45,883 nt of DNA, from contig NW_021834651.1 in the NCBI RefSeq assembly GCF_006345805.1, positions 1-45,883 of the forward strand, given 5' to 3'. This document shows, in pieces, positions 4,828 through 39,074 of the stretch (position 1 is the first letter of the stretch; every line of letters begins with the position of its first letter). Position numbers and translations under genes: made by a program. Under the pieces are notes generated by a model. It saw only the letters and a list, made by a program, of their open reading frames with translations. It was not told the origin of the DNA and did no database searches. Origin of the DNA: Octopus sinensis (lineage: Eukaryota).

Positions 4828-5970
4828 CAAATCAAAATAGATGAACATCAATGGAATCTGTATCTTTGTGGTACCAGTGCCGGTGGCGCACACACTTTGT
4901 GGTACCAGTGCCGGTGGCACACAAGAGAACCATCCGAACGTGGCCGTAGCCAGTTCCGCATCGACCGGCCTCCGTGCTGTGGGCACGTAACAAACACCAT
5001 CCGATCATGGCCGTTCGCCAGCCTTATCTGGCACCTGTGTCGGTGGCACATAAAAACACCTTCCGAAGACCCAGCAAGACTAGTCAGTCCACCTGTGCAT
5101 ACCTTCCTTCTTGTGACACTTGTGAAGACCGTTTGAGGCAAGTGAAAATCAAATCAAATCAAAATAGACAAAATGATGAACATCAATGGAATTTGTATCT
5201 TGTGGTACCAGTGCCTGTGGCACACAAGAAATCCATCAGTGCCGTAGTCAGTGCGGTGGGCACATGACAAACACCATCCGATCGTGGCCGTTCGCCAGCC
5301 TCATCTAGCACCGTGTCGTGGCACATAAAAACCCATCCGAAGACCCGGCAAGACTAGTCAGGCCATAACCCATGACCCCCCCCCTACCTGGGACGTAGTC
5401 AGTCCACCTGTGCATACCTTCCTTCTTGTGACACTTGTGAAGACCTGTTGAGGCAAGTGAAAATCAAACAAAAATCAAAATAGATGAACATCAATGGAAT
5501 TTGTATCTTTGTGGTACCAGTGCCGGTGGCATGTGGCACATAAGAAAACCATCCGACGTGGCCGTAGCCAGTACCGCATCGACTGGCCTCCGTGCTGTGG
5601 GCATGTAACAGCACCATCCGATCGTGGCCGTTTGCCAGCCTCATCTGGCACCTGTGTCGGTGGTGGCACATAAAAAACACCATCCGAGCGTGGCCGTCTG
5701 CCGCCTCGTCTGGCACCTGTGTCGGTGGCACATAAAAAACACCATCCGAGCGTGGCCGTTTGCCAGCCTCGTCTGGCACCTGTGTCGGTAGCACATAAAA
5801 TCATCCACTACACTCTCGGAGTGGTTGGCGTTAGGAAGGGCATCCAGCTGTAGAAACACTGCCAGATCTGACTGGATGGTGCAGTTTTCGGGCTCCCCAG
5901 ACCCCAGTTGAACCGTCCAACCCATGCTAGCATGGAAGCGGACGTTAAATGATGATGATGATGATGATGA
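4828..5970 (+). repeat. Family B retroposon-like repeat: ~320-bp tandem units, ~55-60-bp subrepeats, (GAT)n tail
   Basis: AATCAAAATAGATGAACATCAATGG occurs 3 times (~4830, 5158, 5472). GTGCCGGTGGCAC subrepeats. Tail TTAGGAAGGGCATCC...(GAT)n. Confidence 0.75.
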
Positions 5971-6020
5971 TTATTATTATTATCATCATTATTATTATTA
6001 TTATATTATTATTATTATCA

Positions 6021-6051
<31 letters not shown>

Positions 6052-6519
6052 CATCATCATTATTATTATTATTATATTATTATTATTATTATTATTATTA
6101 TTACTACTATTATTATTATTATTATCATTATTATTATTATTATCATTATTATTATATTATTATTATTATTATTATTCTTATTATTCTTCTTATTATTATT
6201 ATATTATTATCATTATTATTATTATTATTCATTATATTATTATATTATTATTATTATTATTATTATATTATTATCATTATATTATTATTATCATTATTAT
6301 TATTATTATCTTATTATTATATTATTATTATATTATTATTATTATATTATTATTATTATCATTATTATTATTATTATCATCATCATATATTATTATTATT
6401 ATATTATTATTATTATCATTATTATTATATTATTATTATTATTATTATTCTTCTTATTATTATTATTATTATCATATTATATTATTATCATTATTATTAT
6501 TATTATCATATTATTATAT

Positions 6520-6552
<33 letters not shown>

Positions 6553-7279
6553 CATATTATTTTATTATATTATTATCATTATATTATTATTATCATTATT
6601 ATTATTATTATCATTATTATTATATTATTATTATTATTATTATTATTATATTATTATTATTATCATATTATTATATTATTATTATCATCATCATTCTTTA
6701 TTATATATTATTATTATTATATATTATTATTATCATTATTATTATATTATTATTATTATTCTTATTATTATTATTATTATTATATTATTATCATTATTAT
6801 TATTATTATCATTATTATTATTATTATCATTATTATTATATTATTATTCTTATTATTATTATTATTATTATATTATTATCATTATTATTATTATTATCAT
6901 TATTATTATTATTATCATTATTATTATATTATTATTATTATTATTATTCTTATATTATTATTATTATCATCATTATTATTATTATTATTATTATCATCAT
7001 TATTATTATTATTATATTATTATTATCATTATTATTATATTATTATTATTATTATTCTTATTCTTATTATTATTATTATATTATTATCATTATTATTATT
7101 ATTATCATTATTATTATTATTATCATTATTATTATATTATTATTATTATTATTATTCTTATTATTCTTATTATTATTATTATTATATTATTATCAGTATT
7201 ATTATTATTATCATTATTATTATTATTATCATTATTATTATATTATTATTATTATTATTCTTATTATTATTATTATTAA
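5950..7279. repeat. Degenerate (ATT)n microsatellite, ~1.33 kb
   Basis: ATT array interrupted by ATC/CTT variants, in the TXNL1 intron. Confidence 0.97.
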
Positions 7280-9991: not shown

Positions 9992-10096
9992 ATATTCATG
10001 AAAGACAATCAGCAAGGAATGGACACAACACAACTAGATTACTTGTGTTTTATAGGAACCCCCGTATCTTCAACAGATATGTCTGATTTCAAAAGG
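9992..10096 (+). CDS. TXNL1: TXNL1 exon (PITH domain end)
   Basis: ccccacAG|ATA...AGG|GTACGT. 105 nt, phase 0/0. Encodes IFMKDNQQGMDTTQLDYLCFIGTPVSSTDMSDFKR. Confidence 0.95.
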
Positions 10097-10281
10097 GTAC
10101 GTCAGTTTATTCTCCCCATTTTCTTCTTTCTCTCCTTTCCAGTCAGTTCTCTCTAACTGCTGGGTGGAAGCATTAAATCTCTGCAGATCGATCAATCAGT
10201 TAATGATCTGTTTACAAATGCTGGTCGTCAGTAAACTGTAACGACCATCATCATTAGTGTCCTACACTATCATTGTTACTA

Positions 10282-10858
10282 CCTATTTCTTTATTACCCC
10301 ACAAGGGGCTAAACACAGAGGGGACAAACAAGGACAGACATAGGTATTAAGTCGATTACATCGATCCCAGTGTGTAACTGGTACTTAATTTATCGACCCC
10401 GAAAGGATGAAAGGCAAAGTCGACCTCGGAGGAATTTGAACTCAGAACATAAAGACAGACGAAATAACCTATTTCTTTACTACCCACAAGGGGCTAAACA
10501 CAGAGGGGACAAACAAGGACAGACAAACGGATTAAGTCGATTATATCGACCCCAGTGCGTAACTGGTACTTAATTTATCGACCCCGAAAGGATGAAAAGC
10601 AAAGTCGACCTCGGAGGAATTTGAACTCACAACATAGCGGCAGATAAAATACCTATTTCTTTATTACCCACAAGGGGCTAAACATAGAGGGGACAAACAA
10701 GGACAGACATAGGTATTAATTCGATTACATCGATCCCAGTGTGTAACTGGTACTTAATTTATCGACCCCGAAAGGATGAAAGGCAAAGTCGACCTCGGAG
10801 GAATTTGAACTCAGAACGTAAGGGTAGACGAAATACGGCTACGCATTTCGCCCGGCGT
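10282..10858 (-). mobile_element. SINE family C concatemer (3 bodies + 1 head)
   Basis: ~180-bp unit repeated head-to-tail through a GAAATACCTATTTC junction. Single head remnant at ~10830-10858. Confidence 0.8.
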
Positions 10859-11394
10859 ACTAACGTTACTACCACCACCATAGTCATCATCATCATCACC
10901 ACCATCATCATTATCACCATGCTTTGCTTTCCCTGTCACGAGCCCTTGTCTATTTCCAAAGAAGTCTGTATTTTCCCTAATCCTTCAGTGGGAACATGAT
11001 GACCAGGCATGTTTTCACGGAAGATTGCAAACGAACAACACTGCTTACATGAAGGGGATGTTTCTTTACAACAAGTGCACAATGCCTGCAGCACAAGGAA
11101 ATACATACTACATAGTGATGATGATGATACACATACGGTACAAAAAAATGTACATACTCTTTACTCTTTTACTTGTTTCAGTCATTTGACTGCGGCCAGT
11201 AAAAGTAAAAGAGTAAAGAGAGTAAGAGTATATATATATGATGCATGATTAATTAAAACAATGTGAATGAAAAAGATTACATTTGACAGTAATTAATGAA
11301 TGCTAAAGGGTTAATGAATCTGTCAGGATTGTGACAGTCCTAAGACACACACACACACAGATGTGCATGCACATACGCACACATACAGATATGC

Positions 11395-11955
11395 ATGCGG
11401 TGGCACGTAAAAAGCACCATCCGACTGTGGCCGTTCGCCAGCCTCGCCTGGCCCCCATGCCGGTGGCACGTAAAAAGCACCACCCAATCGTGTCCATTTG
11501 CCAGCCTCGTCTGGCCCCCATGCCGGTGGCACGTAAAAAGCACCATCCGTCCATGGCCGTTTGCCAGCCTCGCCTGGCACCTGTGGCGGTGGCACGTAAA
11601 AAGCACCATCCGTCCGTGGATGTTTGCCAGCCTCGTCTGGCCCCCATGCCGGTGGCACGTAAAAAGCACCATCCGTCCGTGGATGTTTGCCAGCCTCGTC
11701 TGGCCCCCATGCCGGTGGCACGTAAAAAGCACCATCCGTCCGTGGCCATTTCCCAGCCCCGTCTGGCACCTGTGGCGGTGGCACATAAAAAGCACCCACT
11801 ACACTCATGGAGTGGTTGGCGTTAGGAAGGGCATCCAGCCGTAGAAACATTGCCAGATCAGACTGGGCCTGATGCAGCCTTCTGGATTCCCAGACCCTAG
11901 TTGCACCGTCCAACCCATGCCAGCATGGAAAGCGGACGCTAAATGATGATGATGA
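11395..11955 (+). repeat. Family B element with a 61-bp minisatellite (~6 units)
   Basis: GGTGGCACGTAAAAAGCACC recurs every 61 bp, with a (GAT)n tail. Related copies or tails at 13245-13446, 16826-17010, 23860-24012, 38527-38948, 40320-40680 and 41172-41328. Confidence 0.8.
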
Positions 11956-12082: not shown

Positions 12083-12112
12083 GTTGCTGGTAAGAAAGGT
12101 GAAAGCCATTAG
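12083..12112 (+). CDS. TXNL1: TXNL1 terminal coding exon VAGKKGESH-stop
   Basis: ctttgtttcAG|GTT GCT GGT AAG AAA GGT GAA AGC CAT TAG, matching the conserved TXNL1 C-terminus GKKGESH. Confidence 0.95.
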   Translation, partial: VAGKKGESH

Positions 12113-12601
12113 AAGAGGAAGGAAAAGAAAAGTAAAAAAAAAAACAAGCAATGCTCCAGCTGGTATACTGCAATGTTCCCCCCTCTCCCCCATAAAGAGA
12201 TTTCTTTTTCCTCTCCCTCTCTGAAATGCAATCGTCTGAACTGATTTCTACTGATATCCGGTCAAAAAATGAGTGTCAGCTGATGAAGGGGAACTGTTTT
12301 CATTTTTTTTTTTTCCTTTCTTGTTTCCTATTTGTTTATATTTCCTGACCCCACTCTCCCACTGTCTTAGTGTGTGCAGTGGTAAATTTACAGCCCCTCG
12401 TTCCTTGTCCCCCCTTTCTCTCTAAACCCACTCCTAACTCCTCTTTGTTTCTTGTCTTGGCTTCTTTCCCCCCCCCCGACCCCAACTCTCTCCCTCCCCT
12501 GTTTCCAGCCCTTTGCCACTTCTTTTTCTCCATTTCTTCCTCCTCTGAACACTTCCAACACTTCAATCTTTTTTTTTATTAATACAACAGAGAAAACATC
12601 A

Positions 12602-13885: not shown

Positions 13886-14225
13886 ATACCAGAATACCAT
13901 TTGGGGTCTCCTGGTACGTCTTCTACATCAAGACCCTTCTTTCTCCCCCACTATTATTCTTCGTAACCTCTCAGCAGCAAATAATACAAAAACCACCTCC
14001 TTCTGTACCTCCTATTTATTAATAGATGTGGGTATCTCTGTATTTGTCCCCATAGTAGCTTGACGACCTGTGATGGTTTGTTTACGTCCTCATAACTTAG
14101 TGGTCTGGCAAAAGAGACCGATAGAATAAGTACCAGGCTTATCAATCAGCGTCTGACCCTTCGTTCAACTAAAAATTCTTCAAGGCTGTGCGCCAGCGAA
14201 GGGTAAAGGAAAGATGAAAACATGT

Positions 14226-17215: not shown

Positions 17216-20200
17216 TTAAGCTGTTGCAAAGTTTTTTTCTGGTCCCAGTTCAGGGCCGTTATCTGTTTTCTTCTCCGTTGCCAGTAGAGGGAGATGTATG
17301 ACAAAGGAGTAGTTTCCTTCGTAGTGGCAAATGTCATGGATGCGCTTCATGAAGTTCTTGTCCTTGATGTCGACCATGGAGATATAGAAGACCTCTATAT
17401 TTGGTTTCTTCCTCACAAGCACAATGACCGCCGTCTTCAACAAGATCTCAAACGGTTGCTCCAGGAAGATTGACTGCACCAGGGAAGTGAAGAACGCCAG
17501 AGCCCAGGCAATGCTCATCTCGTAGCCATATGTGAGACCATACAGCATGATAAAGTAGGTAGAAATGAGACAGAAGGTCAAAGTTATAGTCCAGGATATA
17601 TACACAAACCACCAAGGCAGAAATCCATGTGACGCCAAGGGGTTGGAGAACTTCTTGGATTCCTTCTTTGTATTTGAATCCTCGGTATCCCCTTTGTCCT
17701 GATTCAGTGAAGCTGAAGACTGTTTCTCATCCGTCTTGTCTTTTTGACTGTCCTTTTCATGGTCACCAGAAGCATCTGTTTTTGGCAACGGGGCAACAGC
17801 ATTTGCTGACCGCTCCAAATAAACAGACCCCGTTTCCTGCTCCTTCTCCATGTCCTTCTTTAGTTCTGCTCTGCTGTCTTGCTGTTTGTCATCGGCCCCT
17901 GCAGTTGTGCCCTTTTTCGGTTTCACTTTGGCATTGGCACCAGACGGTCCTGACCTGCTACTTTCATCTCCAATAAGGCTTTGTAAAATGTTATAAACGT
18001 TTGGGCTGAGGCTTGGACGGACATGGAGCGAAAACGAATAGCTGCCGGACTTATTCTCCGTATTTCGCTTCCTCTTCTGGTCTGCGGCCATCATCTCTCT
18101 CTCCTCCTCTTCCTTAATCTCTGGTTTCAATTTCGTCTCTTTCTTGTGAACAATAAAGAAGTCGTGGAATCTCGGTTTCACTTGTATAAACAGCTGGGTT
18201 AGGACCAAACCCACGGGGATAATCACCAGTGAGGTCTGCAGACCGATGATAAGGGGTGTGACAGACATCTTCATAGAACCAATTGTCACCTCTTTTTCAG
18301 GGTCATCTGTAGGGACTCCATAAAACATGATGTTGCCTAGCATGAGTGCCAGCAACAGAGCAAAGGTGCAGGTGAGCCGTTGTGCACGAGTAAAGGAACT
18401 CGGTGGTGTGAAAATGTAGCTAAACCATTGGTGAGTTCTTTGAAAACAATTTAAAACTTCCAATCGGAAAATTTTCCATCTGTGAGAGTTTTGTTGAATT
18501 GTGTCCGAGGGTTTTAGGAAGGCATGTGTCAAGAAAAGGCCTCTCTTTGGTGACATCCAGTCTGAGAGTACAAAAAGCCACAAGTCTTTTGTCTGTAAAT
18601 CCTGTATCGTTACGTAATCAAGGTTCCAGTCTGGGCTTGAACCGGAATTATCATGCCAGATTAAGATCTGTTCTATATCACCAATACCATTCTCAGTTGT
18701 AAGCAGAAACCAATTTGCATCGCCCGACTGGAAGCACTGCTTGTGTGAGTCGCGGAGATATACTATAGAGCTGTGGCCCCTGGCCCCCATTAGGACTAGA
18801 TAAACCCTTGCTGTGGTACCGGAACCAAGCCACCACTTTGTCTTGACGCAGACAAGATAGATGTAACCAGTTAAGTCGTTGCTGAGAACGGTCAAGGAAG
18901 CGGACTCCCTGTCTCGCCAGTCCAGTCGCTTCGTCAGATGGAGGAGTCCAATGTAGATGACCCACGCCAAGAGCACAACCAACAACATTATCGGGTTTGT
19001 GAAAACCTCTGCAAACCGATACGCGTCATCAATCGGGTGCACAACGTTAGGTGGGACAAAAAACCTGGCCGACAGCACGTTGCTCTTTTCACAGGTGCAC
19101 TCAACCGCCTGGTTGAACTTGACAGAACTGTTACTCAGTTTACAGTTTTTCTCACTCCACACATTGTGATTGTCATTCCAGTTGAGACACAACTTGCTCA
19201 TAAATCCAAAATGCATTGGTATTTCTATGTTTTCCACGGGTCCTTTGAGTCCCCTATGACTTTTGTTGTTCATTTTGTTCATTGGAATCTGGACTTTTAT
19301 ATCAGCAATGGCGTAATACCTGAATGGTTTGACCATGACAAAATAGACTTTTTCCTTGACCGAACCGACAGGTACAAGCACTGTGTAGTTGACATGGTCC
19401 ACGTGGGAAACCCTGCTTTCCGACAGCCTCTGGAAATTCCCCAACACAAACTGCTTGTGCGACAGCTTCCGTGTGAGATGCACAACCACATCAAGCGGAA
19501 ACGGTCCTTCATCCAGGTTAATAAATATGTGATGGTTACTGGATTGGGAACTCTTTAATGTGATCATCGGGATGGAGAAATTCCGAGAGTAATGTGGATA
19601 AAGAAAGTTCCCTTCACGACGAAAATCAAATTTTAGAATGAATTTTTTCCATTGTAGGTCAACCCAAACCTTGGGGCCAGATGCACGGAAGTATTTCGGA
19701 CCAACATCAACAAGTTTAGGATTCTTTGTGTAGCCCCTGATTGAGAGTACTGGATAATTTGGCCTTATAGATTCTGCTAAAGCATAAGGATTTTCATAAA
19801 TTAAAAATGCGCTCAAAACTGCCGCCCCTCCCTTCGAAGTGCTGTTTTCAGGTTGGCATTTGAACACGACAGAGATGTCTGTGTTACCGGCGTACAGCGA
19901 GGACGAGTATGGACTGTCGCAGACGCCAGATTTCAACATGGAGGTCATTATTACATTTAGCACAGAATTTGGTGATCGAATTACTACTTGAGCCCTCGAT
20001 GGGTTCCCAAGCCAAATACCTGCACTGACGAGGTTGATGGCAGAAAGAAAATTATCTACTGATTTAATAGATACTCGTATACTCTTTTTCTTCTCTTCAG
20101 CGGTCATTTTAAACCTTGGTTCAACTTCATAGCTGCTCAGCATGTGACTTATACTGGACACAAGGTAGCGAGCGTCACGGTGCACCGCATCCCTTGGCAT

Positions 20201-21568
20201 TCCTGCTGCGGCCCCTTCCTTCAGCTGAATTGCAAAATTAGAATAAATTTCGCTGCAGATAAGTTTACTGGGGGAATTGAACTCTCGTTTCTTCTTTGTG
20301 ATTTCATCCATCAATGTGGACAGGTCTGACAATTTCTGTGCCTTGTCAACCTGCAGCCTGTAGACAGCCCGCAGAAGCTTCTGGCGGAGAGCAATAAAGT
20401 TCTTAAGCCCTTCTTCTTTCTCGTTTTCTGTATAGAAGGAATAGGCTTTGTTGAAATCCGTGCTGTGCTTGTTAACTTCACTGGTTAGATACAACAAAGA
20501 ATCTTTAGCTATCTTTACGTCCTCAATCAACATCGCTCTGTCAATCTGATCGCTTAGTTCTCTGAATGTAATTGGTGGTTTCACTGTGTACCTAAATGTC
20601 GACAGTATCTCCATACACGTCTTGCCATTGCTGACACTGTACACATACAGATGGACGTCCACTTGATAGTTTGGTTTGGCTGGCAACGTGAAACTGGCCT
20701 CTAACGATTCCCCAAGCTTTTCATCCTGTTTTATGTAAGGCACCAAACCCTTATACGACAAACTGTAGAAGAAATAAGCCTTTTGGCTGAAAAGAGAGAG
20801 GTCTTTACAATAAAGCCTGTACAAGGTGACCGTTTGGAAGCCTGACTGTGGCTTCATTTCACAGCGTTTCTCGAACAGGTAGGGGAGAATTTGTATCTGT
20901 ATGTTGTACCTGTACCGGTTCACATCATCTTTTTCCACTGGTTGACCGCTGTCTAAATTCATGGTCACTTCGAGGGAAATTAAGTTTGGATAGCCGTCCT
21001 TAACAAGCTGCGATGACAAGAACAGATATTGTGTGTCTGTGCCCGTAGCAACAATGATGCTAGCACCTTCCATATTACGAGCATCAAAGCAATGTATTTT
21101 TTTCTTTAGGTCAGCAAAATTACACTGAAACAAATCGTCAACGCCCAGGACTTCATACTGACCAGTGTTGCAGTTGAGTTGGTAATGAACGTTGCCTTTC
21201 TTGCCCTCTAAACTTAAGCAGCCCTTTGCACACTCTGTTGTGAGTTTTACAGACTCAGTTCCTGAAGCCACAATGGTTAAATACTTTGACTTTGGAACGA
21301 TGCAGTCTGTTCGGATGTAGTCATCTCCCATCAAATCAACGGATTTTGCTTCGAGCAAGCGCTCCATGAATTCTCCGTCCAGGCAACTCAATTTTACGTT
21401 CATTGTGCTTTTCGATGCTTTGCTTTCAATGGTGTTGGAAACTTTGAAGGTGTCGTAAGGAATAGGTTTTTGGGCAACGACACAGAGCAGTATTCGTTGA
21501 CCTGACAACGACAACAACAACAGCAAAATCATATTGAAAACAACACGACAACATTTGCAGATTTCCAT
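17216..21568 (-). CDS. Single-exon polycystin-1/PKD1-like (PKDREJ-like) receptor, about 1450 aa, only 5 TM
   Basis: Uninterrupted 4.5-kb ORF. ATG at 21568 (or 21532) precedes a hydrophobic signal peptide (MILLLLLSLSGQ). REJ-like segment (CEMKPQSG...YCKD...LPAKPNY, ~20600-21050). GPS-like CLNW..W...C...CTC (~19060-19189) followed by FFVPPN. TM1 (~18940-18995). PLAT (YLVCVKT...GSGTTARVYLVLMGARG...WHDNSGSSPDWNL). FTRAQRLTC TM2, TM3, and FLPWWFVYISW TM4/TM5. Confidence 0.9.
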   Translation of the reverse strand: MEICKCCRVVFNMILLLLLSLSGQRILLCVVAQKPIPYDTFKVSNTIESKASKSTMNVKLSCLDGEFMERLLEAKSVDLMGDDYIRTDCIVPKSKYLTIVASGTESVKLTTECAKGCLSLEGKKGNVHYQLNCNTGQYEVLGVDDLFQCNFADLKKKIHCFDARNMEGASIIVATGTDTQYLFLSSQLVKDGYPNLISLEVTMNLDSGQPVEKDDVNRYRYNIQIQILPYLFEKRCEMKPQSGFQTVTLYRLYCKDLSLFSQKAYFFYSLSYKGLVPYIKQDEKLGESLEASFTLPAKPNYQVDVHLYVYSVSNGKTCMEILSTFRYTVKPPITFRELSDQIDRAMLIEDVKIAKDSLLYLTSEVNKHSTDFNKAYSFYTENEKEEGLKNFIALRQKLLRAVYRLQVDKAQKLSDLSTLMDEITKKKREFNSPSKLICSEIYSNFAIQLKEGAAAGMPRDAVHRDARYLVSSISHMLSSYEVEPRFKMTAEEKKKSIRVSIKSVDNFLSAINLVSAGIWLGNPSRAQVVIRSPNSVLNVIMTSMLKSGVCDSPYSSSLYAGNTDISVVFKCQPENSTSKGGAAVLSAFLIYENPYALAESIRPNYPVLSIRGYTKNPKLVDVGPKYFRASGPKVWVDLQWKKFILKFDFRREGNFLYPHYSRNFSIPMITLKSSQSSNHHIFINLDEGPFPLDVVVHLTRKLSHKQFVLGNFQRLSESRVSHVDHVNYTVLVPVGSVKEKVYFVMVKPFRYYAIADIKVQIPMNKMNNKSHRGLKGPVENIEIPMHFGFMSKLCLNWNDNHNVWSEKNCKLSNSSVKFNQAVECTCEKSNVLSARFFVPPNVVHPIDDAYRFAEVFTNPIMLLVVLLAWVIYIGLLHLTKRLDWRDRESASLTVLSNDLTGYIYLVCVKTKWWLGSGTTARVYLVLMGARGHSSIVYLRDSHKQCFQSGDANWFLLTTENGIGDIEQILIWHDNSGSSPDWNLDYVTIQDLQTKDLWLFVLSDWMSPKRGLFLTHAFLKPSDTIQQNSHRWKIFRLEVLNCFQRTHQWFSYIFTPPSSFTRAQRLTCTFALLLALMLGNIMFYGVPTDDPEKEVTIGSMKMSVTPLIIGLQTSLVIIPVGLVLTQLFIQVKPRFHDFFIVHKKETKLKPEIKEEEEREMMAADQKRKRNTENKSGSYSFSLHVRPSLSPNVYNILQSLIGDESSRSGPSGANAKVKPKKGTTAGADDKQQDSRAELKKDMEKEQETGSVYLERSANAVAPLPKTDASGDHEKDSQKDKTDEKQSSASLNQDKGDTEDSNTKKESKKFSNPLASHGFLPWWFVYISWTITLTFCLISTYFIMLYGLTYGYEMSIAWALAFFTSLVQSIFLEQPFEILLKTAVIVLVRKKPNIEVFYISMVDIKDKNFMKRIHDICHYEGNYSFVIHLPLLATEKKTDNGPELGPEKNFATA

Positions 21569-27320: not shown

Positions 27321-27689
27321 CCCTTTAGTGTTCAGATTATTCTACCAAAATTAATCCTTTTTTATCCACATTGTTTTGAACTAATCATGCATTATCTTGT
27401 AGCTATGAGATTCTGATGAGGTAGCTGTTAATTTGGTTTGGCTGGCAACGTGAAACTGGCCTCTAACGATTCCCCAAGCTTTTCATCCTGTTTTATGTAA
27501 GGCACCAAACCTTTATACGACAAACTATAGAAGAAATAAGCCTTTTGGCTGAAAAGTGAGAGGTCTTTACAATAAAGCCTGTACAAGATGATATTGTAGG
27601 GTTGGTGTGAGAGACCAGATCTGGCCAGTTTGAACATAAAACAGGCAGAATACTTTTGGCCGGATATGGCCAGTTTAAATGCTAAAGGG
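27321..27689. mobile_element. piggyBac-like MITE carrying a captured PKD1-like gene fragment
   Basis: TTAA|CCCTTTAG...CTAAAGGG|TTAA. Internal 27432-27587 copies 20670-20825. Confidence 0.85.
27432..27587 (-). pseudogene. 156-bp duplicated fragment of the PKD1-like REJ region
   Basis: 153/156 identical to 20670-20825, same strand. Encodes LYRLYCKD...TLPAKPN. Confidence 0.92.
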
Positions 27690-28357: not shown

Positions 28358-29187
28358 TTACGTGTTTTTCATTTGGAATACAAAACCATCTCCAGGAAGT
28401 TTTGATTCAATCCAGGGAAAGAAGAAAGCCAGGAACCAGTGAGGACCAAAAACGTTGGTCCAGTTGTGTTTGAAACCCATGTCGAAGCATGTGATTTTCT
28501 TTTTGTATTCATACTGTGTCTGTCCGTACAGGATCTGCCTGGCTTGGTTTCTCAGTGACCAGATGAAGAGAAGCAGAAGTAGGAATCCGATGGCACTCAT
28601 TGTAGTAACAAAAAACGTATATGCATCATAATAACCCAAAACCCATCCAACATGGGGCATCGTAAACGAAATGATGTTGAAGAAGCCGAGAGGCCCCTTT
28701 AGTCGGCACACAAACTCATAGTTGAAAAGGTTACAGTAAAGGGCCATGATGAACATATACAGCAGCATAACACAGAAATAGCGCTGGTTTCGGTAGCCGA
28801 TGCAGCAGCCGGCGAACCAGCAGTGGTGGTCATGTCGAAGGATGCAGACGTTGCAGTTGAGGCAGTGATGTGAACGAGCTGGAACGTGAGCGTTGCAGTC
28901 CTGGCAAAATCTCCAGGTTTGACTGACCAAGGGCAAGTGTGTGCGACACCTCACCGATGTGTCCGTCAGCACCAGAAAAATCAGGTTTGCATAGATGTGC
29001 GAAATGAGGACAACGAAGACAGTGATGTGCACGACGACGATAAAGGACACTTCGGAATAGTAAGTTGGCATAATGAGAAAACCTTCGTACCACGTCAGCA
29101 GAAGCCCTCCAAACAGGAAAACCAAAAGGAAAACTCGGTCAATGATTTTTAAGGGCCATGGATGCCTCTTGTAGGTTTGTGTCTGAT
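28358..29187 (-). CDS. DHHC palmitoyltransferase (ZDHHC24-like), main coding exon
   Basis: DHHC cysteine-rich domain FCQDC...RSHHCLNCNVCILRHDHHCWFAGCCIGYRNQRYF, four hydrophobic segments, GQTQYE (TTxE-like) and FDMGFKHNWTNVFG (PaCCT-like). Begins at acceptor tttaatttcAG (29189-29188). No in-frame ATG before TM1. The ZDHHC24 subfamily assignment is from recall. Confidence 0.9.
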
Positions 29188-33444: not shown

Positions 33445-34185
33445 GCAACAGATTCTTATTTCTTTACTGCCCACAAGGGGCTGCATACAGAGGGGACAAA
33501 CAAGGACAGACAAATGGATTAAATCGATTATATCGACACCAGTGCGAAAGGATGAAAGGCAAAATCGACCTCGGCGGAATTTGAACTCAGAACGTAACAG
33601 CACACGAAATACCTATTTCTTTACTACCCACAAGGGGCTAAATACAGAGGGGACAAACAAGGACAGACATAGGTATTAAATCGATTATATCAACCCCAGT
33701 GCATAACTGGTACTTAATTTATCGACCCCGAAAGGACGAAAGGCAAAATCGACTTCAGCGGAATTTGAACTCTGAACGTAACGGCAGACGAAATACCCAT
33801 TTCTTTACTACCCAAAAGGGCTAAACACAGAGGGGACAAACAAGGACAGACAAATGGATTAAATCGATTACATCGACGCCTGTGCGTAACTGGTACTTAA
33901 TTTATCGACCCCGAAGGGATGAAAGGCAAAGTCGACCTCGGCGGAATTTGAACTCAGAACGTAACGGCAGATGAAATACCTATTTCTTTACTACCCACAA
34001 GGGGCTAAACACAGAGGGGACAAACAAGGACAGACAAAGGGATTAAGTCGATTATATCGATCCCAGTGCGTAACTGTTACTTATTTAATCGACCCCGAAA
34101 GGACGAAAAGCAAAATCGACTTCAGCGGAATTTGAACTCAGAACGTAAAGACCGACCAAATAAGTATTCCGTCCGACATGCTAAA
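33445..34185 (-). mobile_element. SINE family C concatemer (~4 bodies)
   Basis: Tandem ~180-bp units with a head remnant at ~34165-34185. Confidence 0.8.
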
Positions 34186-34199
34186 GACTCTGACAGCTT

Positions 34200-34620
34200 A
34201 CTGCTTTAAAAGTCAGAAATGAAGAAATGATTACAAACCTTCGCGCCAAACCATAATTCTCCTCTCGCTTTATAATTATTGCTGTGATGCTGATTGTTAC
34301 TATAGTGACCGGCTGTTGTTGGTACTTCAGGTAATTTACTTGTGGTAGAAGCAACAATAATAATGAGTATCGTTACTATTATGATTACAATGTATAAATG
34401 CGCCTGGCCCGGGACAGCAACTTGGATGGCCGGGTGTCGGATTTGAAAATTCGAAGACCGAGATTGCAAGTTCGAGATTCGAAGGTAAAGATTGACCGGG
34501 CGTTACCAAAGTACGTAAGGGGATTTCAGAATCCCGACACCGGCTTAGTAGTTTGTTGCTCTCATACAGTAGAGAGTTTGCGTTGCTATGAAATGTCATT
34601 ATTCTATAGAAAAGTCGTGT
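34200..34620. promoter_or_regulatory. CpG-enriched unique patch, possible promoter/first exon (possibly bidirectional)
   Basis: Locally CpG-rich, non-repeat sequence with donor-like sites CAG|GTAATT (34330, +), AAG|GTAAAG (+) and GCA|GTAAGC (~34200, -). Lies between ZDHHC (-) and the orphan exon (+). Confidence 0.3.
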
Positions 34621-34795: not shown

Positions 34796-34976
34796 CTCAT
34801 AATCGTATCTACAAAACTTCTTTTGGCGATCCTTCGGTATAGGTTCACACGTGACTTTGTTTACGTTTCTGAAGATAAGAGAAACCCTTTTCTCACACCC
34901 CTAACCCTAACCCCCCATATATATAAAAAAACAAACACTTTCTTGAAATGTATCCGGTACTTATACCTATTTCTTT

Positions 34977-35378
34977 ACTACCCACAAGGGGCTAAACACA
35001 GAGTGGACAACAAGGACAGACAAAGGGATTAAGTCGATTACATCGACCCCAGTGCGTAACTGGTACTTAATTTATCGACCCCGAAAGGATGAAAGGCAAA
35101 GTCGACCTCGGCGGAATTTGAACTCAGAACGTAACGGCAGACAAAATACCTATTTCTTTATTACCCACAAGGGGCTAAACATAGAGGGGACAAACAAGGA
35201 CAGACATAGGAATTAAGTCGATTACATCGACCCCAGTGCGTAACTGGTACTTTAATTTATCGACCCCGAAAGGATGAAAGGCAAAGTCGACCTCGGCAGA
35301 ATTTGAACTCAGAACGTAACGGCAGACGAAATACCGCTAAGCATTTCGCCCGGCGTGCAAACGATTCGGCCAGCTTGC
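34977..35378 (-). mobile_element. SINE family C dimer with head
   Basis: Two bodies plus an intact head at ~35335-35378. Confidence 0.8.
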
Positions 35379-38150: not shown

Positions 38151-39074
38151 TATATATATATCATATTTTAACATTTTTTTGTCAAAAATTAGGTTTAAAA
38201 AATATAGTAGTTGTACATAGACAGTATTATAATCCCGTACAAAACCTTTTCTTCCAAATTTTAAGCCCCCAAAATTAGGGGATTCCTTACACATGTTAAA
38301 ATACGGTATATATATATATTCAAAATGTAACCACATGTGAATCGTTGGCGATTTTCTTCCTCCGTCTTCCTTTCTATTGGACTTTCCTCTGTTTCTGAAG
38401 AAGAGCACGGCTCAAAATGTTAAACCATCTTTTTTTCCTTCCCTGAGCGTCTGCTTTACATGTGCCACATCCTCGCGTTGTTGTGTTTTTTTTTTGTGTT
38501 TGTTCATCTTTTTTTAGATTTACTATCATCATCATCATCATCATTTAGCGTCCGTTCTCCATGCTAGCATGGGTTGGATGGTTCAACTGGGGTCTGGGAA
38601 GCTGGAAGGCTGCACCAGGCTCCAGTCTTATCTGGCAGTGTTTCTACGGCTGGATGCCCTTCCTAACGCCAACCACTCTGAGTGTAGTGGGTGCTTTTTA
38701 CGTGCCACTGGCACAGGTGCCAGACAGAGCTGGCAAACGGCCACGAACGGATGGTGCTTTTACGTGTCACCGGCATGGGGGCCAGGCGAGGCTGGCAAAC
38801 GGCCACGAACGGATGGTGCTTTTACGTGTCACCGGCATGGGGGCCAGGCGATGCTGGCAACGGACACGAACGGATGGTGCTTTTACGTGTCACCGGCATG
38901 GGGGCCAGGCAAGGCTGGCAATGGCCACGAACGGATGGTGCTTTTACATGGGTGAATGAATTATCCTATGTTTACCGTCATTTGTTAATTTCTCAATTAA
39001 TTGAAATAAAGGCAGTGAGTTTCAACCGAATTATAACAAAAACGTTTGTCAAACAACCTGGTATAATAATAATA

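What the first reader, a model, noticed from the sequence alone, without database searches (positions are those of the whole stretch)
17216..17628. A 'half polycystin-1': receptor ectodomain plus TM1-5/PLAT, with no TOP or channel module
Seen: the ORF carries the PKD1-family TM4/TM5 signature (FLPWWFVYISW...FFTSLVQSIFLEQPFEILLK), runs ~65 more residues and stops at 17216. AATAAA follows 35 nt later. I see no TOP or pore exons between 17.2 kb and the convergent TXNL1 3' end. Known: polycystin-1 proteins have 11 TMs, and the S1-S6 module and C-terminal coiled coil assemble with PKD2. The break falls in the cytoplasmic loop between TM5 and S1, where mammalian PC1 is cut to release the 6-TM P100 fragment. 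Inference: this gene encodes only the N-terminal receptor half. It could be a channel-independent receptor, a decoy, or one partner of a split polycystin whose channel half is encoded elsewhere.
Basis: partly seen in the sequence, partly recalled or inferred. Interest (0 to 1): 0.8.

Follow-up and report, generated by a model that had tools for sequence, protein, structure and literature searches.

The report
Channel-less five-helix polycystin-1 relative in octopus
This octopus gene encodes a polycystin-1-type membrane receptor that really does stop after its fifth membrane helix, with no channel-like half, and the same truncated form is kept under selection in three Octopus species and a distant relative, so the front half of a polycystin can persist as a protein of its own.

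Summary
Window 17216-21501 (-) is the 4.3-kb last exon of a three-exon Octopus gene. It encodes a signal peptide, an ~840-aa ectodomain, a degenerate GPS, TM1, PLAT, TM2-TM5 and a 65-aa tail. The stop is TAA at 17218-17216 and AATAAA lies at 17181-17176.

No TOP or channel exon exists anywhere in the 45.9-kb window. This was tested with tblastn of 64 channel halves and with a purpose-built HMM that had a positive control. TXNL1 converges 5.1 kb downstream.

The stop is not a private lesion:
- O. vulgaris and O. bimaculoides end identically.
- A collinear orthologue from an unidentified distant species (about 30% identity, intronless, also next to a convergent TXNL1) ends at the same place with a conserved tail.
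- dN/dS is about 0.2 in both lineages.

These eight proteins form one clade nested among molluscan 11-TM PKD1L2-like proteins, so the channel half was lost.

Channel-less PKD1-family proteins already exist (sea-urchin REJ1/2/7-10), so this is a new variant rather than a new kind. I found no transcript evidence. The function is inferred: a receptor or adhesion protein, or an accessory subunit. Octopus has also lost the GPS cleavage triad.

The parts
17216..21501 (-). Exon 3 coding part: 97% of the CDS, from the Gly codon completed at the acceptor to the stop. It encodes the ectodomain, GPS, TM1, PLAT, TM2-5 and the tail.
   Evidence: ORF; tblastn of O. vulgaris P0001 aa 27-1469 at 97.5%; acceptor cag at 21504-21502
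29083..29187 (-). Exon 2 (105 nt): DQTQTYKRHPWPLKIIDRVFLLVFLFGGLLLTWYE(G), the signal peptide or anchor of the annotated isoform
   Evidence: spliced CDS of 4407 nt is open
34239..34254 (-). Coding end of exon 1 (ATG GTT TGG CGC GAA G | gt)
   Evidence: identical to the start of the O. vulgaris gene model
19046..19189 (-). GPS-like motif (C-x2-W-x6-W-x4-C ... C-T-C). The cleavage triad HL(S/T) is replaced by K-S-N.
   Evidence: Pfam GPS passes in orthologues P0011 and P0165 but not in octopus
18935..18991 (-). TM1
   Evidence: hydropathy; aligned to PC1 TM1
18545..18859 (-). PLAT/LH2 domain (cytosolic)
   Evidence: Pfam PF01477 E=3.6e-16
18197..18370 (-). TM2, short outer loop and TM3
   Evidence: hydropathy; PC1 alignment E=5e-34 covers TM1-PLAT-TM2-TM3
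17624..18196 (-). About 190-aa K/E/D/S-rich cytosolic loop between TM3 and TM4; fast-evolving and predicted to lack regular structure
   Evidence: composition; dN/dS 0.66 and 0.44; no regular structure in the low-confidence AF2 model
17414..17614 (-).
   Evidence: matched by hundreds of PKD1-family proteins
17219..17413 (-). 65-aa cytosolic tail with a conserved motif F-x-[LI]-S...D-x2-[FL]-[ML]-x-R-I-x3-C-H-[FY]-E-x2-[FY]-[ST]-F-V-I-x2-P. It is not similar to the TM5-S1 linker of 11-TM relatives.
17216..17218 (-). Stop codon TAA
   Evidence: same C-terminus ...FATA in P0001 and P0002
17176..17181 (-). AATAAA poly(A) signal candidate, with a GT-rich element downstream
   Evidence: identical in O. 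vulgaris
12083..12112 (+). Last coding exon of convergent TXNL1 (VAGKKGESH*)
10004..10102 (+). TXNL1 PITH-domain exon. Its counterpart lies convergent, 9 kb downstream of the orthologue in L002.

Best explanation
Shown: this is an intact, conserved gene for a channel-less member of the polycystin-1 (PKD1L2/REJ-like) family. The protein is about 1468 aa, with the N-terminus outside and the C-terminus inside the cell. In order it has:
- a signal peptide;
- an ~840-aa ectodomain, made of a divergent REJ-like region followed by a GPS motif;
- TM1;
- a cytosolic PLAT domain;
- TM2 and TM3;
- a ~190-aa charged, fast-evolving loop;
- TM4 and TM5;
- a conserved 65-aa cytosolic tail.

It has no S1-S6 channel-like module, no TOP domain and no C-terminal coiled coil.

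Inferred: it descends from an 11-TM molluscan PKD1L2-like ancestor by loss of the 3' half. Retroposition of a prematurely terminated transcript is one possible route, because the distant orthologue is intronless and 97% of the octopus CDS is one exon.

Inferred function: it cannot form part of a pore, and it cannot bind a PKD2-type subunit through a coiled coil. It most likely acts as a ligand-binding or adhesive surface receptor. Its output would run through the PLAT domain (membrane-lipid or Ca2+-dependent anchoring and trafficking), the loop and the conserved tail. Alternatively it could be an accessory subunit that docks its 5-TM bundle in trans onto a TRPP channel.

In Octopus the GPS triad is K-S-N instead of H-L-S/T. 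The protein is therefore probably not autoproteolytically cleaved and would act as one chain. The distant orthologue keeps H-L-S.
For: Family assignment: PC1 (6A70_B) matches at E=5e-34 over TM1-PLAT-TM2-TM3, with a weaker match over TM4-5. Pfam finds PLAT. Of 1510 family hits, the closest are molluscan PKD1L2-like proteins that carry REJ+GPS+PLAT+Polycystin_dom+PKD_channel.

Topology: five TMs and none after aa 1385.

No channel module: none in the protein and none in the DNA of the window, L001 or L002.

Conserved stop: O. vulgaris and O. bimaculoides have the same C-terminus. P0011 is collinear end to end and stops at the same place with a homologous tail. P0165 and P0167-9 do the same.

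Synteny: the convergent TXNL1 neighbour is conserved.

Selection: dN/dS is 0.21 (window vs O. vulgaris) and 0.19 (P0011 vs P0165). For the tail, there are 0 differences in the first pair and dN/dS is 0.36 in the second.

Phylogeny: the eight 'half' proteins form one NJ clade nested among 11-TM molluscan proteins.

Ectodomain: it is homologous to Haliotis P0015 residues 418-935, which overlap the Pfam REJ domain at 229-668 (hhalign probability 98.9%).

GPS triad: lost in three Octopus species, retained in P0011.

Poly(A) signal: 34 nt after the stop.
Against: - I could not examine any transcript, Iso-Seq or proteomic evidence, so the 3' end rests on a poly(A)-signal motif and on comparative data.
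- The organism behind P0011 and P0165 is unidentified, so the depth of conservation is inferred from ~30% identity plus synteny.
- The O. vulgaris product name says 'isoform X1', which hints at other isoforms I could not inspect.
- Structure models were too poor (pLDDT 31 and 39) to confirm a GAIN fold or a tail fold.
- The function is entirely inferred.
- The retroposition origin is speculative, because the exon structures of the 11-TM relatives were not available.
Confidence: 0.8

Rival explanations
1. Split polycystin. The 5-TM half is one obligatory partner, and a free-standing PKD1-type TOP+S1-S6 protein encoded elsewhere reassembles with it non-covalently. This would mimic the PC1 fragments left after the P100 cut.
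For: - The stop falls in the loop that is topologically equivalent to the P100 cleavage loop.
- Cephalopods do have channel-bearing TRPP genes elsewhere (PMC13402157).
- The conserved cytosolic tail could be a docking element.
Against: - No such free-standing channel half was looked for or found. The tools here could not search an octopus genome.
- The tail has no similarity to the TM5-S1 linker of 11-TM relatives.
- The family lost the half at least as long ago as the common ancestor of two very divergent lineages, and no linked partner lies nearby.
Confidence: 0.12
2. The annotated stop belongs to a short isoform only. A longer 11-TM isoform is made by splicing from within exon 3 to distant channel exons outside the window, beyond TXNL1.
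For: - The product name 'isoform X1' implies more than one model.
- A weak donor-like GTGAGG sits exactly at the TM5/tail boundary, at 17416.
- Many RefSeq PKD1L2-like models in other phyla also end just after TM5. This could reflect short isoforms of full genes.
Against: - The tail downstream of that site is conserved and under selection in both lineages.
- The GTGAGG is absent in P0011 and P0165.
- The P0011 gene is one uninterrupted ORF.
- A convergent TXNL1 lies immediately downstream in both lineages.
- No channel exon lies within 17 kb downstream in the window or 10 kb in L001 and L002.
Confidence: 0.06
3. A decaying or truncated pseudogene copy, or an assembly or annotation artefact.
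For: - The gene is truncated relative to its family.
- Pfam misses GPS and REJ in the octopus protein.
- A 166-nt fragment copy of the exon lies in the intron.
Against: - A 4.4-kb ORF is intact in three Octopus assemblies and in five sequences of a distant lineage.
- dN/dS is about 0.2 in both lineages, with TM regions at 0.06-0.17.
- The stop position is the same in independent assemblies.
Confidence: 0.02

Closest known systems
11-TM polycystin-1 family proteins (PKD1, PKD1L1-3, PKDREJ; molluscan PKD1L2-like proteins such as Haliotis rubra XP_046574496.1)
   Same: - The ectodomain is homologous to the REJ-containing region.
- The order GPS motif, TM1, cytosolic PLAT, TM2-TM5 is the same.
- PC1 aligns at E=5e-34.
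- The large single coding exon recalls intronless PKDREJ (PMC1934368).
   Different: - It lacks the TOP/Polycystin_dom, the S1-S6 PKD_channel module and the C-terminal coiled coil or G-protein-binding tail.
- It has its own conserved 52-65-aa tail instead.
- Octopus has lost the HL(S/T) GPS triad.
Sea-urchin REJ proteins with fewer than 11 TMs (SpREJ1, 8, 9: 1 TM; SpREJ2: 2 TM; SpREJ7: 6 TM; SpREJ10: none)
   Same: These are cDNA-verified PKD1-family members that lack the channel-like module. They show that the receptor part can exist alone (PMC1934368).
   Different: - None is described with exactly TM1-PLAT-TM2-5. Only five of the ten urchin proteins have PLAT, and the paper does not say which.
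- They are deuterostome lineage expansions, not orthologues.
- The cephalopod form is nested in molluscan 11-TM PKD1L2-like proteins.
The PC1 fragment left when P100 is removed (the C-terminal fragment minus the last six TMs)
   Same: Same topology and the same boundary: the third intracellular loop after TM5 (PMC2925899).
   Different: - In PC1 this is a proteolytic product of an 11-TM precursor whose exact cut site is unknown.
- Here the boundary is genomically encoded, with a dedicated conserved tail.
Adhesion GPCRs
   Same: A large adhesive ectodomain followed by a GPS motif immediately before the first TM helix.
   Different: It has five TMs rather than seven, no 7tm_2 domain, and a PLAT domain in the first cytosolic loop. 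In Octopus the cleavage triad is gone.

Membership tests
Polycystin-1 (PKD1) family | PLAT/LH2 domain in the first cytosolic loop, directly after TM1 | tested here: met
   Pfam PF01477 E=3.6e-16 at aa 904-1008 of window:17219-21568, 26 residues after TM1
Polycystin-1 (PKD1) family | TM1-TM5 N-terminal membrane domain homologous to PC1 | tested here: met
   phmmer vs PDB: PC1 6A70_B E=5e-34 over TM1-PLAT-TM2-TM3, with a weaker match to TM4-5; 1510 family hits with the post-PLAT query
Polycystin-1 (PKD1) family | GPS motif (end of a GAIN domain) just before TM1, with the HL(S/T) cleavage triad | tested here: inconclusive
   The Cys/Trp scaffold is present. Pfam GPS passes the gathering score in orthologues P0011 (27.9 bits) and P0165 (29.3 bits) but is not detected in octopus. 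The triad is K-S-N in three Octopus species and H-L-S in P0011. The GAIN fold was not confirmed because the AF2 model had pLDDT 39.
Polycystin-1 (PKD1) family | REJ domain in the ectodomain | tested here: inconclusive
   Pfam REJ is not detected in octopus, P0011 or P0165. hhalign of the cephalopod ectodomain against relatives gives probability 98.9%, aligned to Haliotis P0015 418-935, which overlaps its Pfam REJ at 229-668.
Polycystin-1 (PKD1) family, canonical 11-TM form | TOP/Polycystin_dom plus S1-S6 PKD_channel module (TM6-TM11) | tested here: not met
   No Pfam hit at E<=1. The purpose-built HMM scores E=0.98 on the protein. Nothing is found in the six-frame window. No hydrophobic segment follows aa 1385.
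Polycystin-1 (PKD1) family, canonical 11-TM form | C-terminal cytosolic tail with a coiled coil that binds PKD2 | tested here: not met
   The protein ends 65 aa after TM5, and the tail shows no similarity to channel-half sequences. No dedicated coiled-coil predictor was run.
TRPP / PKD2 channels | PKD_channel / Ion_trans six-TM pore domain | tested here: not met
Adhesion GPCR | GAIN/GPS followed by a seven-TM secretin-like domain | tested here: not met
   Five TMs, no 7tm_2 hit, PLAT after TM1
Channel-less PKD1-family proteins (sea-urchin REJ1/2/7-10 type) | PKD1-family ectodomain and GPS with fewer than 11 TMs, verified at transcript level | not testable with these tools
   The architecture fits, but no transcript data could be reached.

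The most novel reading that the evidence does not exclude
The 5-TM 'front half' of polycystin-1 (GPS-TM1-PLAT-TM2-5) is an autonomous functional module that evolution has released from the channel half more than once. The examples would be a cephalopod lineage with a dedicated conserved tail and, independently, a vertebrate (bichir, teleost, frog) PKD1L2-like clade whose models end in PDZ-ligand-like S/T-x-L, along with scallop, amphioxus and tick models. If so, it works either alone or in trans as an accessory subunit of TRPP channels. That would make it a natural system for separating PC1's receptor, PLAT and membrane-domain functions from its channel function.
Probability: 0.25. Interest if true: 0.7.

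Novelty: new variant of a known kind. Interest (0 to 1): 0.45.

Why it matters
What the first five membrane helices and the PLAT domain of polycystin-1 do, apart from carrying the channel-like half, is poorly understood. It is hard to study in the 11-TM protein.

This gene encodes exactly that part and has been kept under purifying selection in two very divergent lineages. That shows the module has a function independent of a covalently attached channel. It also supplies a compact, nearly intronless construct for testing that function: trafficking, lipid binding by PLAT, modulation of TRPP channels in trans, and ligand binding by the ectodomain.

The Octopus and P0011 pair also offers a natural comparison of a GPS with and without the cleavage triad.

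The finding is of moderate rather than high surprise, because sea-urchin REJ proteins already showed that PKD1-family members can lack the channel part.

Tried and rejected
Searches that added nothing:
- The profile search of the word-indexed protein database with alignment A1 gave no new hits and did not even recover P0011. The first search found only the two Octopus proteins plus LOXHD1 through PLAT.
- The look-up of encoding contigs had no record for P0002 or for the contiguous window ORF.
- Searching papers for the run and assembly accessions, to name the P0011/P0165 organism, found nothing.
- A literature search for a described 5-TM or 'short isoform' PKD1L2 found nothing relevant. The oyster polycystin paper concerns PKD2.

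Structure prediction:
- AlphaFold2 on five-sequence alignments gave pLDDT 31 (GPS to end) and 39 (ectodomain).
- Only the secondary structure is usable. Foldseek against the PDB gave no match at E<=0.001. I did not use the remaining fold searches.

Ideas tested and dropped:
- The Logan contigs carrying P0165 are not transcripts. They start in a (TA)n microsatellite, carry conserved upstream genomic sequence and have no poly(A).
- Exon 2 is not a duplicate of the exon-3 signal-peptide region. Only one 166-nt fragment is duplicated.
- The donor-like GTGAGG at the TM5/tail boundary is not a relic intron boundary. It matches 6 of 9 consensus positions and is absent in P0011 and P0165.
- The A-rich tract after the P0011 stop is not a convincing retro-copy poly(A) relic. 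It is not conserved in L003, and the genome is AT-rich.
- The scorpion protein P0033 as NJ sister of the clade is treated as tree noise.
- Hits with 94-175 residues after TM5 are not short forms. They are fragments that run into S1 and the TOP domain.
Full report
**What is at the coordinates**

The minus strand carries a 1500-codon ORF from 21718 to 17216. The window is Octopus DNA. It is collinear with O. vulgaris chromosome OX597841.1 at 94-98% nucleotide identity (locus L001). The ORF matches the O. vulgaris protein 'kidney disease 1-like 2 isoform X1' (P0001, 1469 aa) at 98% and O. bimaculoides A0A0L8GRK9 (P0002) at 82%.

Mapping P0001 onto the window gives three coding exons:
- the end of exon 1 at 34254-34239 (MVWRE);
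- exon 2 at 29187-29083;
- exon 3 at 21501-17216.

The spliced CDS is 4407 nt and open. The finding's interval, 17216-17628, covers TM4, TM5 and the tail. The quoted peptide strings are there. Sixty-five residues follow TM5. The stop is TAA at 17218-17216, and AATAAA lies at 17181-17176 followed by a GT-rich stretch. That whole stretch is identical in O. vulgaris.

**Domain anatomy**

- Pfam finds only PLAT (E=3.6e-16, aa 904-1008 of the 1450-aa ORF product).
- Against solved structures, the last 661 residues match human polycystin-1 (6A70_B, 8Z6F) at E=5e-34 across TM1-PLAT-TM2-TM3, with a weaker second match over TM4-TM5.
- A hydropathy scan gives a signal-like segment, five TM segments and nothing hydrophobic after residue 1385.
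- The TM3-TM4 loop is about 190 aa, rich in K/E/D/S and fast-evolving.
- The GPS scaffold (C-x2-W...W-x4-C...C-x-C) is visible. However, the cleavage triad H-L-(S/T) found in relatives reads K-S-N or Q-S-N in all three Octopus species.
- Pfam does not call REJ. A profile-profile comparison aligns the cephalopod ectodomain (aa ~96-624) to Haliotis rubra PKD1L2-like P0015 residues 418-935 at 98.9% probability. That region overlaps P0015's Pfam REJ domain at 229-668.
- AlphaFold2 models built on five sequences were poor (pLDDT 31 and 39). They are used only for secondary structure: a helical block followed by a beta-rich block before the GPS, a beta-sandwich at PLAT, and one helix in the tail. 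Foldseek was uninformative.

**Is the channel half hidden nearby?**

No. I cut the 64 family members that have at least 500 residues after TM5 at that point and ran their C-terminal parts against the window by tblastn. The only hits fell inside the ORF itself and came from two proteins that contain a second GPS-PLAT-TM unit.

I then built a 581-position HMM of the TOP+S1-S6 module from 48 members and searched all six-frame segments. The best E-values were 0.35 in the window, 1 in O. vulgaris L001 and 0.07 in L002. Held-out members cut into 40-aa pieces, to mimic exons, were recovered in 82 of 101 cases at E<0.01.

The downstream neighbour is TXNL1 on the opposite strand (Thioredoxin+PITH). Its last coding exon is at 12083-12112, which leaves 5.1 kb between the two stop codons.

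**Is the stop real and old?**

O. vulgaris and O. bimaculoides both end in ...FATA.

An exhaustive HMMER search of 1.84 billion representative proteins with the post-PLAT segment found 1510 relatives. The best non-Octopus hit, P0011 (1333 aa), comes from an ENA metagenome-assembly contig of an unidentified eukaryote.
- It is collinear with the octopus protein from ectodomain to tail at 29-32% identity.
- It ends two residues after the position aligned to octopus ...EKKTD, which is 14 residues before the octopus stop.
- Its tail is homologous: F-x-[LI]-S...D-x2-[FL]-[ML]-x-R-I-x3-C-H-[FY]-E-x2-[FY]-[ST]-F-V-I-x2-P.
- Its gene is one uninterrupted ORF including the signal peptide.
- Nine kilobases downstream, convergent, lies an exon 82% identical to the window's TXNL1 exon, so the locus is syntenic.

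A second species carries P0165 (76% identical to P0011; variants P0167-9), with the same end.

dN/dS is 0.21 between the window and O. vulgaris, and 0.19 between P0011 and P0165. TM segments score 0.06-0.17. The tail shows 0 differences in the first pair and 0.36 in the second.

In an NJ tree of the TM2-3 and TM4-5 cores, the eight proteins form one clade. That clade is nested among 11-TM PKD1L2-like proteins of Mya, Mytilus, Haliotis, Pecten and unionids. The truncated form is therefore derived, monophyletic and maintained.

**What could not be shown**

- I had no access to octopus transcripts. The Logan contigs that carry P0165 look genomic rather than transcript-derived.
- The identity of the P0011 and P0165 species is unknown. 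The ~30% identity, set against 82% between two Octopus species, together with conserved synteny, suggests a distant cephalopod such as a decapodiform. That is inference only.
- A search for a free-standing PKD1-type channel half in an octopus genome was not possible with these tools.

**Mechanism**

Shown: this is an N-out/C-in five-TM membrane protein with a large ectodomain, a cytosolic PLAT domain, a charged fast-evolving loop and a conserved tail. It has no pore module and no coiled coil.

Inferred: it cannot contribute a pore subunit, and it cannot use the canonical coiled-coil route to PKD2. The most likely role is a surface receptor or adhesion protein that signals or traffics through PLAT, the loop and the tail. 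The alternative is an accessory subunit that docks in trans onto a TRPP channel. Cephalopods have channel-bearing TRPP genes (PMC13402157).

In Octopus the loss of the H-L-S/T triad predicts an uncleaved, single-chain protein. The P0011 lineage keeps H-L-S.

The origin may have been retroposition of a prematurely terminated transcript, given the intronless orthologue and the single 4.3-kb coding exon in Octopus. I found no relic that proves this.

**Comparison with what is known**

The parallel with the PC1 P100 cut is correct at the level of topology. P100 is predicted to arise in the third intracellular loop and to contain the last six TMs (PMC2925899).

The premise that PKD1-family proteins always have 11 TMs is not correct. 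Of the ten cDNA-verified sea-urchin REJ proteins, three have one TM, one has two, one has six and one has none (PMC1934368). What is new here is the exact cut (TM1-PLAT-TM2-5 plus a dedicated tail), the lineage, and the evidence of long-term conservation.

A recent cephalopod TRP survey covers only channel-bearing TRPP genes. I found no paper describing this gene.

**Side observation**

Among the top 150 relatives, residues after TM5 fall into two groups: about 540-680 in 11-TM proteins and about 12-80 in short ones. Hits with 94-175 residues are fragments that run into S1 and the TOP domain.

Many of the short ones are probably fragments too. Several, however, are long RefSeq models without a channel module:
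- Pecten maximus, 1179 aa;
- Branchiostoma lanceolatum, 1715 aa;
- Pleuronectes platessa, 1084 aa;
- Erpetoichthys (956 aa) and Polypterus (962 aa);
- three frog genera;
- a tick isoform.

The vertebrate ones cluster together, and several end in S/T-x-L. Their tails are unrelated to the cephalopod tail. Whether they are real genes, short isoforms or split gene models is open.

**Verdict**

This is a new variant of a known kind, of moderate interest. Transcript mapping and a partner search are the decisive missing pieces.

Noticed in passing
window 27426-27591 (-), in intron 2: A 166-nt copy (96.4% identical) of exon-3 segment 20664-20829 (aa 264-321 of the protein) sits in the intron. It is also present in O. 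vulgaris (L001 16567-16740). It is a small intragenic fragment duplication or a gene-conversion tract, and there is no evidence that it is an exon.
   Followed up: partly
window 19046-19189 (-); L002 ~12290-12420: The GPS cleavage triad H-L-(S/T) reads K-S-N (Q-S-N in O. bimaculoides) in Octopus. It is intact (C-E-C-L-H-L-S) in the distant orthologue P0011 and in 11-TM relatives. This predicts lineage-specific loss of autoproteolysis.
   Followed up: partly
window 21502-21568 (-): Upstream of the exon-3 acceptor the frame stays open back to an ATG, giving MEICKCCRVVFNMILLLLLSLSG, which looks like a signal peptide. The distant orthologue is intronless with its own signal peptide. Octopus may therefore have added 5' exons to an originally single-exon gene, or may use two starts.
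   Followed up: no
proteins P0092/P0163, P0066, P0103, P0126, P0190, P0051, P0069, P0098 (not in the window): Vertebrate PKD1L2-like models from bichir, reedfish, plaice and frogs end 17-78 residues after TM5 and have no channel module. They form one NJ clade, and several end in S/T-x-L, which looks like a PDZ ligand. The same clade also contains channel-bearing models (P0064, P0018), so short isoforms or split gene models are possible.
   Followed up: partly
proteins P0016 (Pecten maximus), P0083 (Branchiostoma lanceolatum), P0139 (Ornithodoros turicata): Further long RefSeq models with GPS and PLAT (plus REJ in P0016 and P0083) but no PKD_channel. Their tails are unrelated to the cephalopod tail. 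This suggests either recurrent loss of the channel half or recurrent short isoforms.
   Followed up: partly
window 5970-7278; 5612-5800; 10281-10835; 11394-11796; 33545-34162; 34963-35335; 38690-38947: A 1.3-kb (ATT)n microsatellite (GC about 17%) creates a spurious 458-aa ORF. Families of 62-63-nt and ~184-nt tandem repeats are scattered through the TXNL1 introns and the region around exon 1 of the polycystin-like gene. These repeats account for most of the other long ORFs in the window.
   Followed up: partly
L002 ~14135-14170: An A-rich tract (A13 G A10...) lies about 60 nt after an AATAAA downstream of the intronless orthologue's stop. It could be a retro-copy poly(A) relic, but it is not conserved in the related species (L003) and the genome is AT-rich.
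   Followed up: partly
window 17416 (-): A donor-like GTGAGG sits exactly at the TM5/tail boundary and matches 6 of 9 consensus positions. It is identical in O. vulgaris but absent at the equivalent codons of P0011 and P0165.
   Followed up: yes
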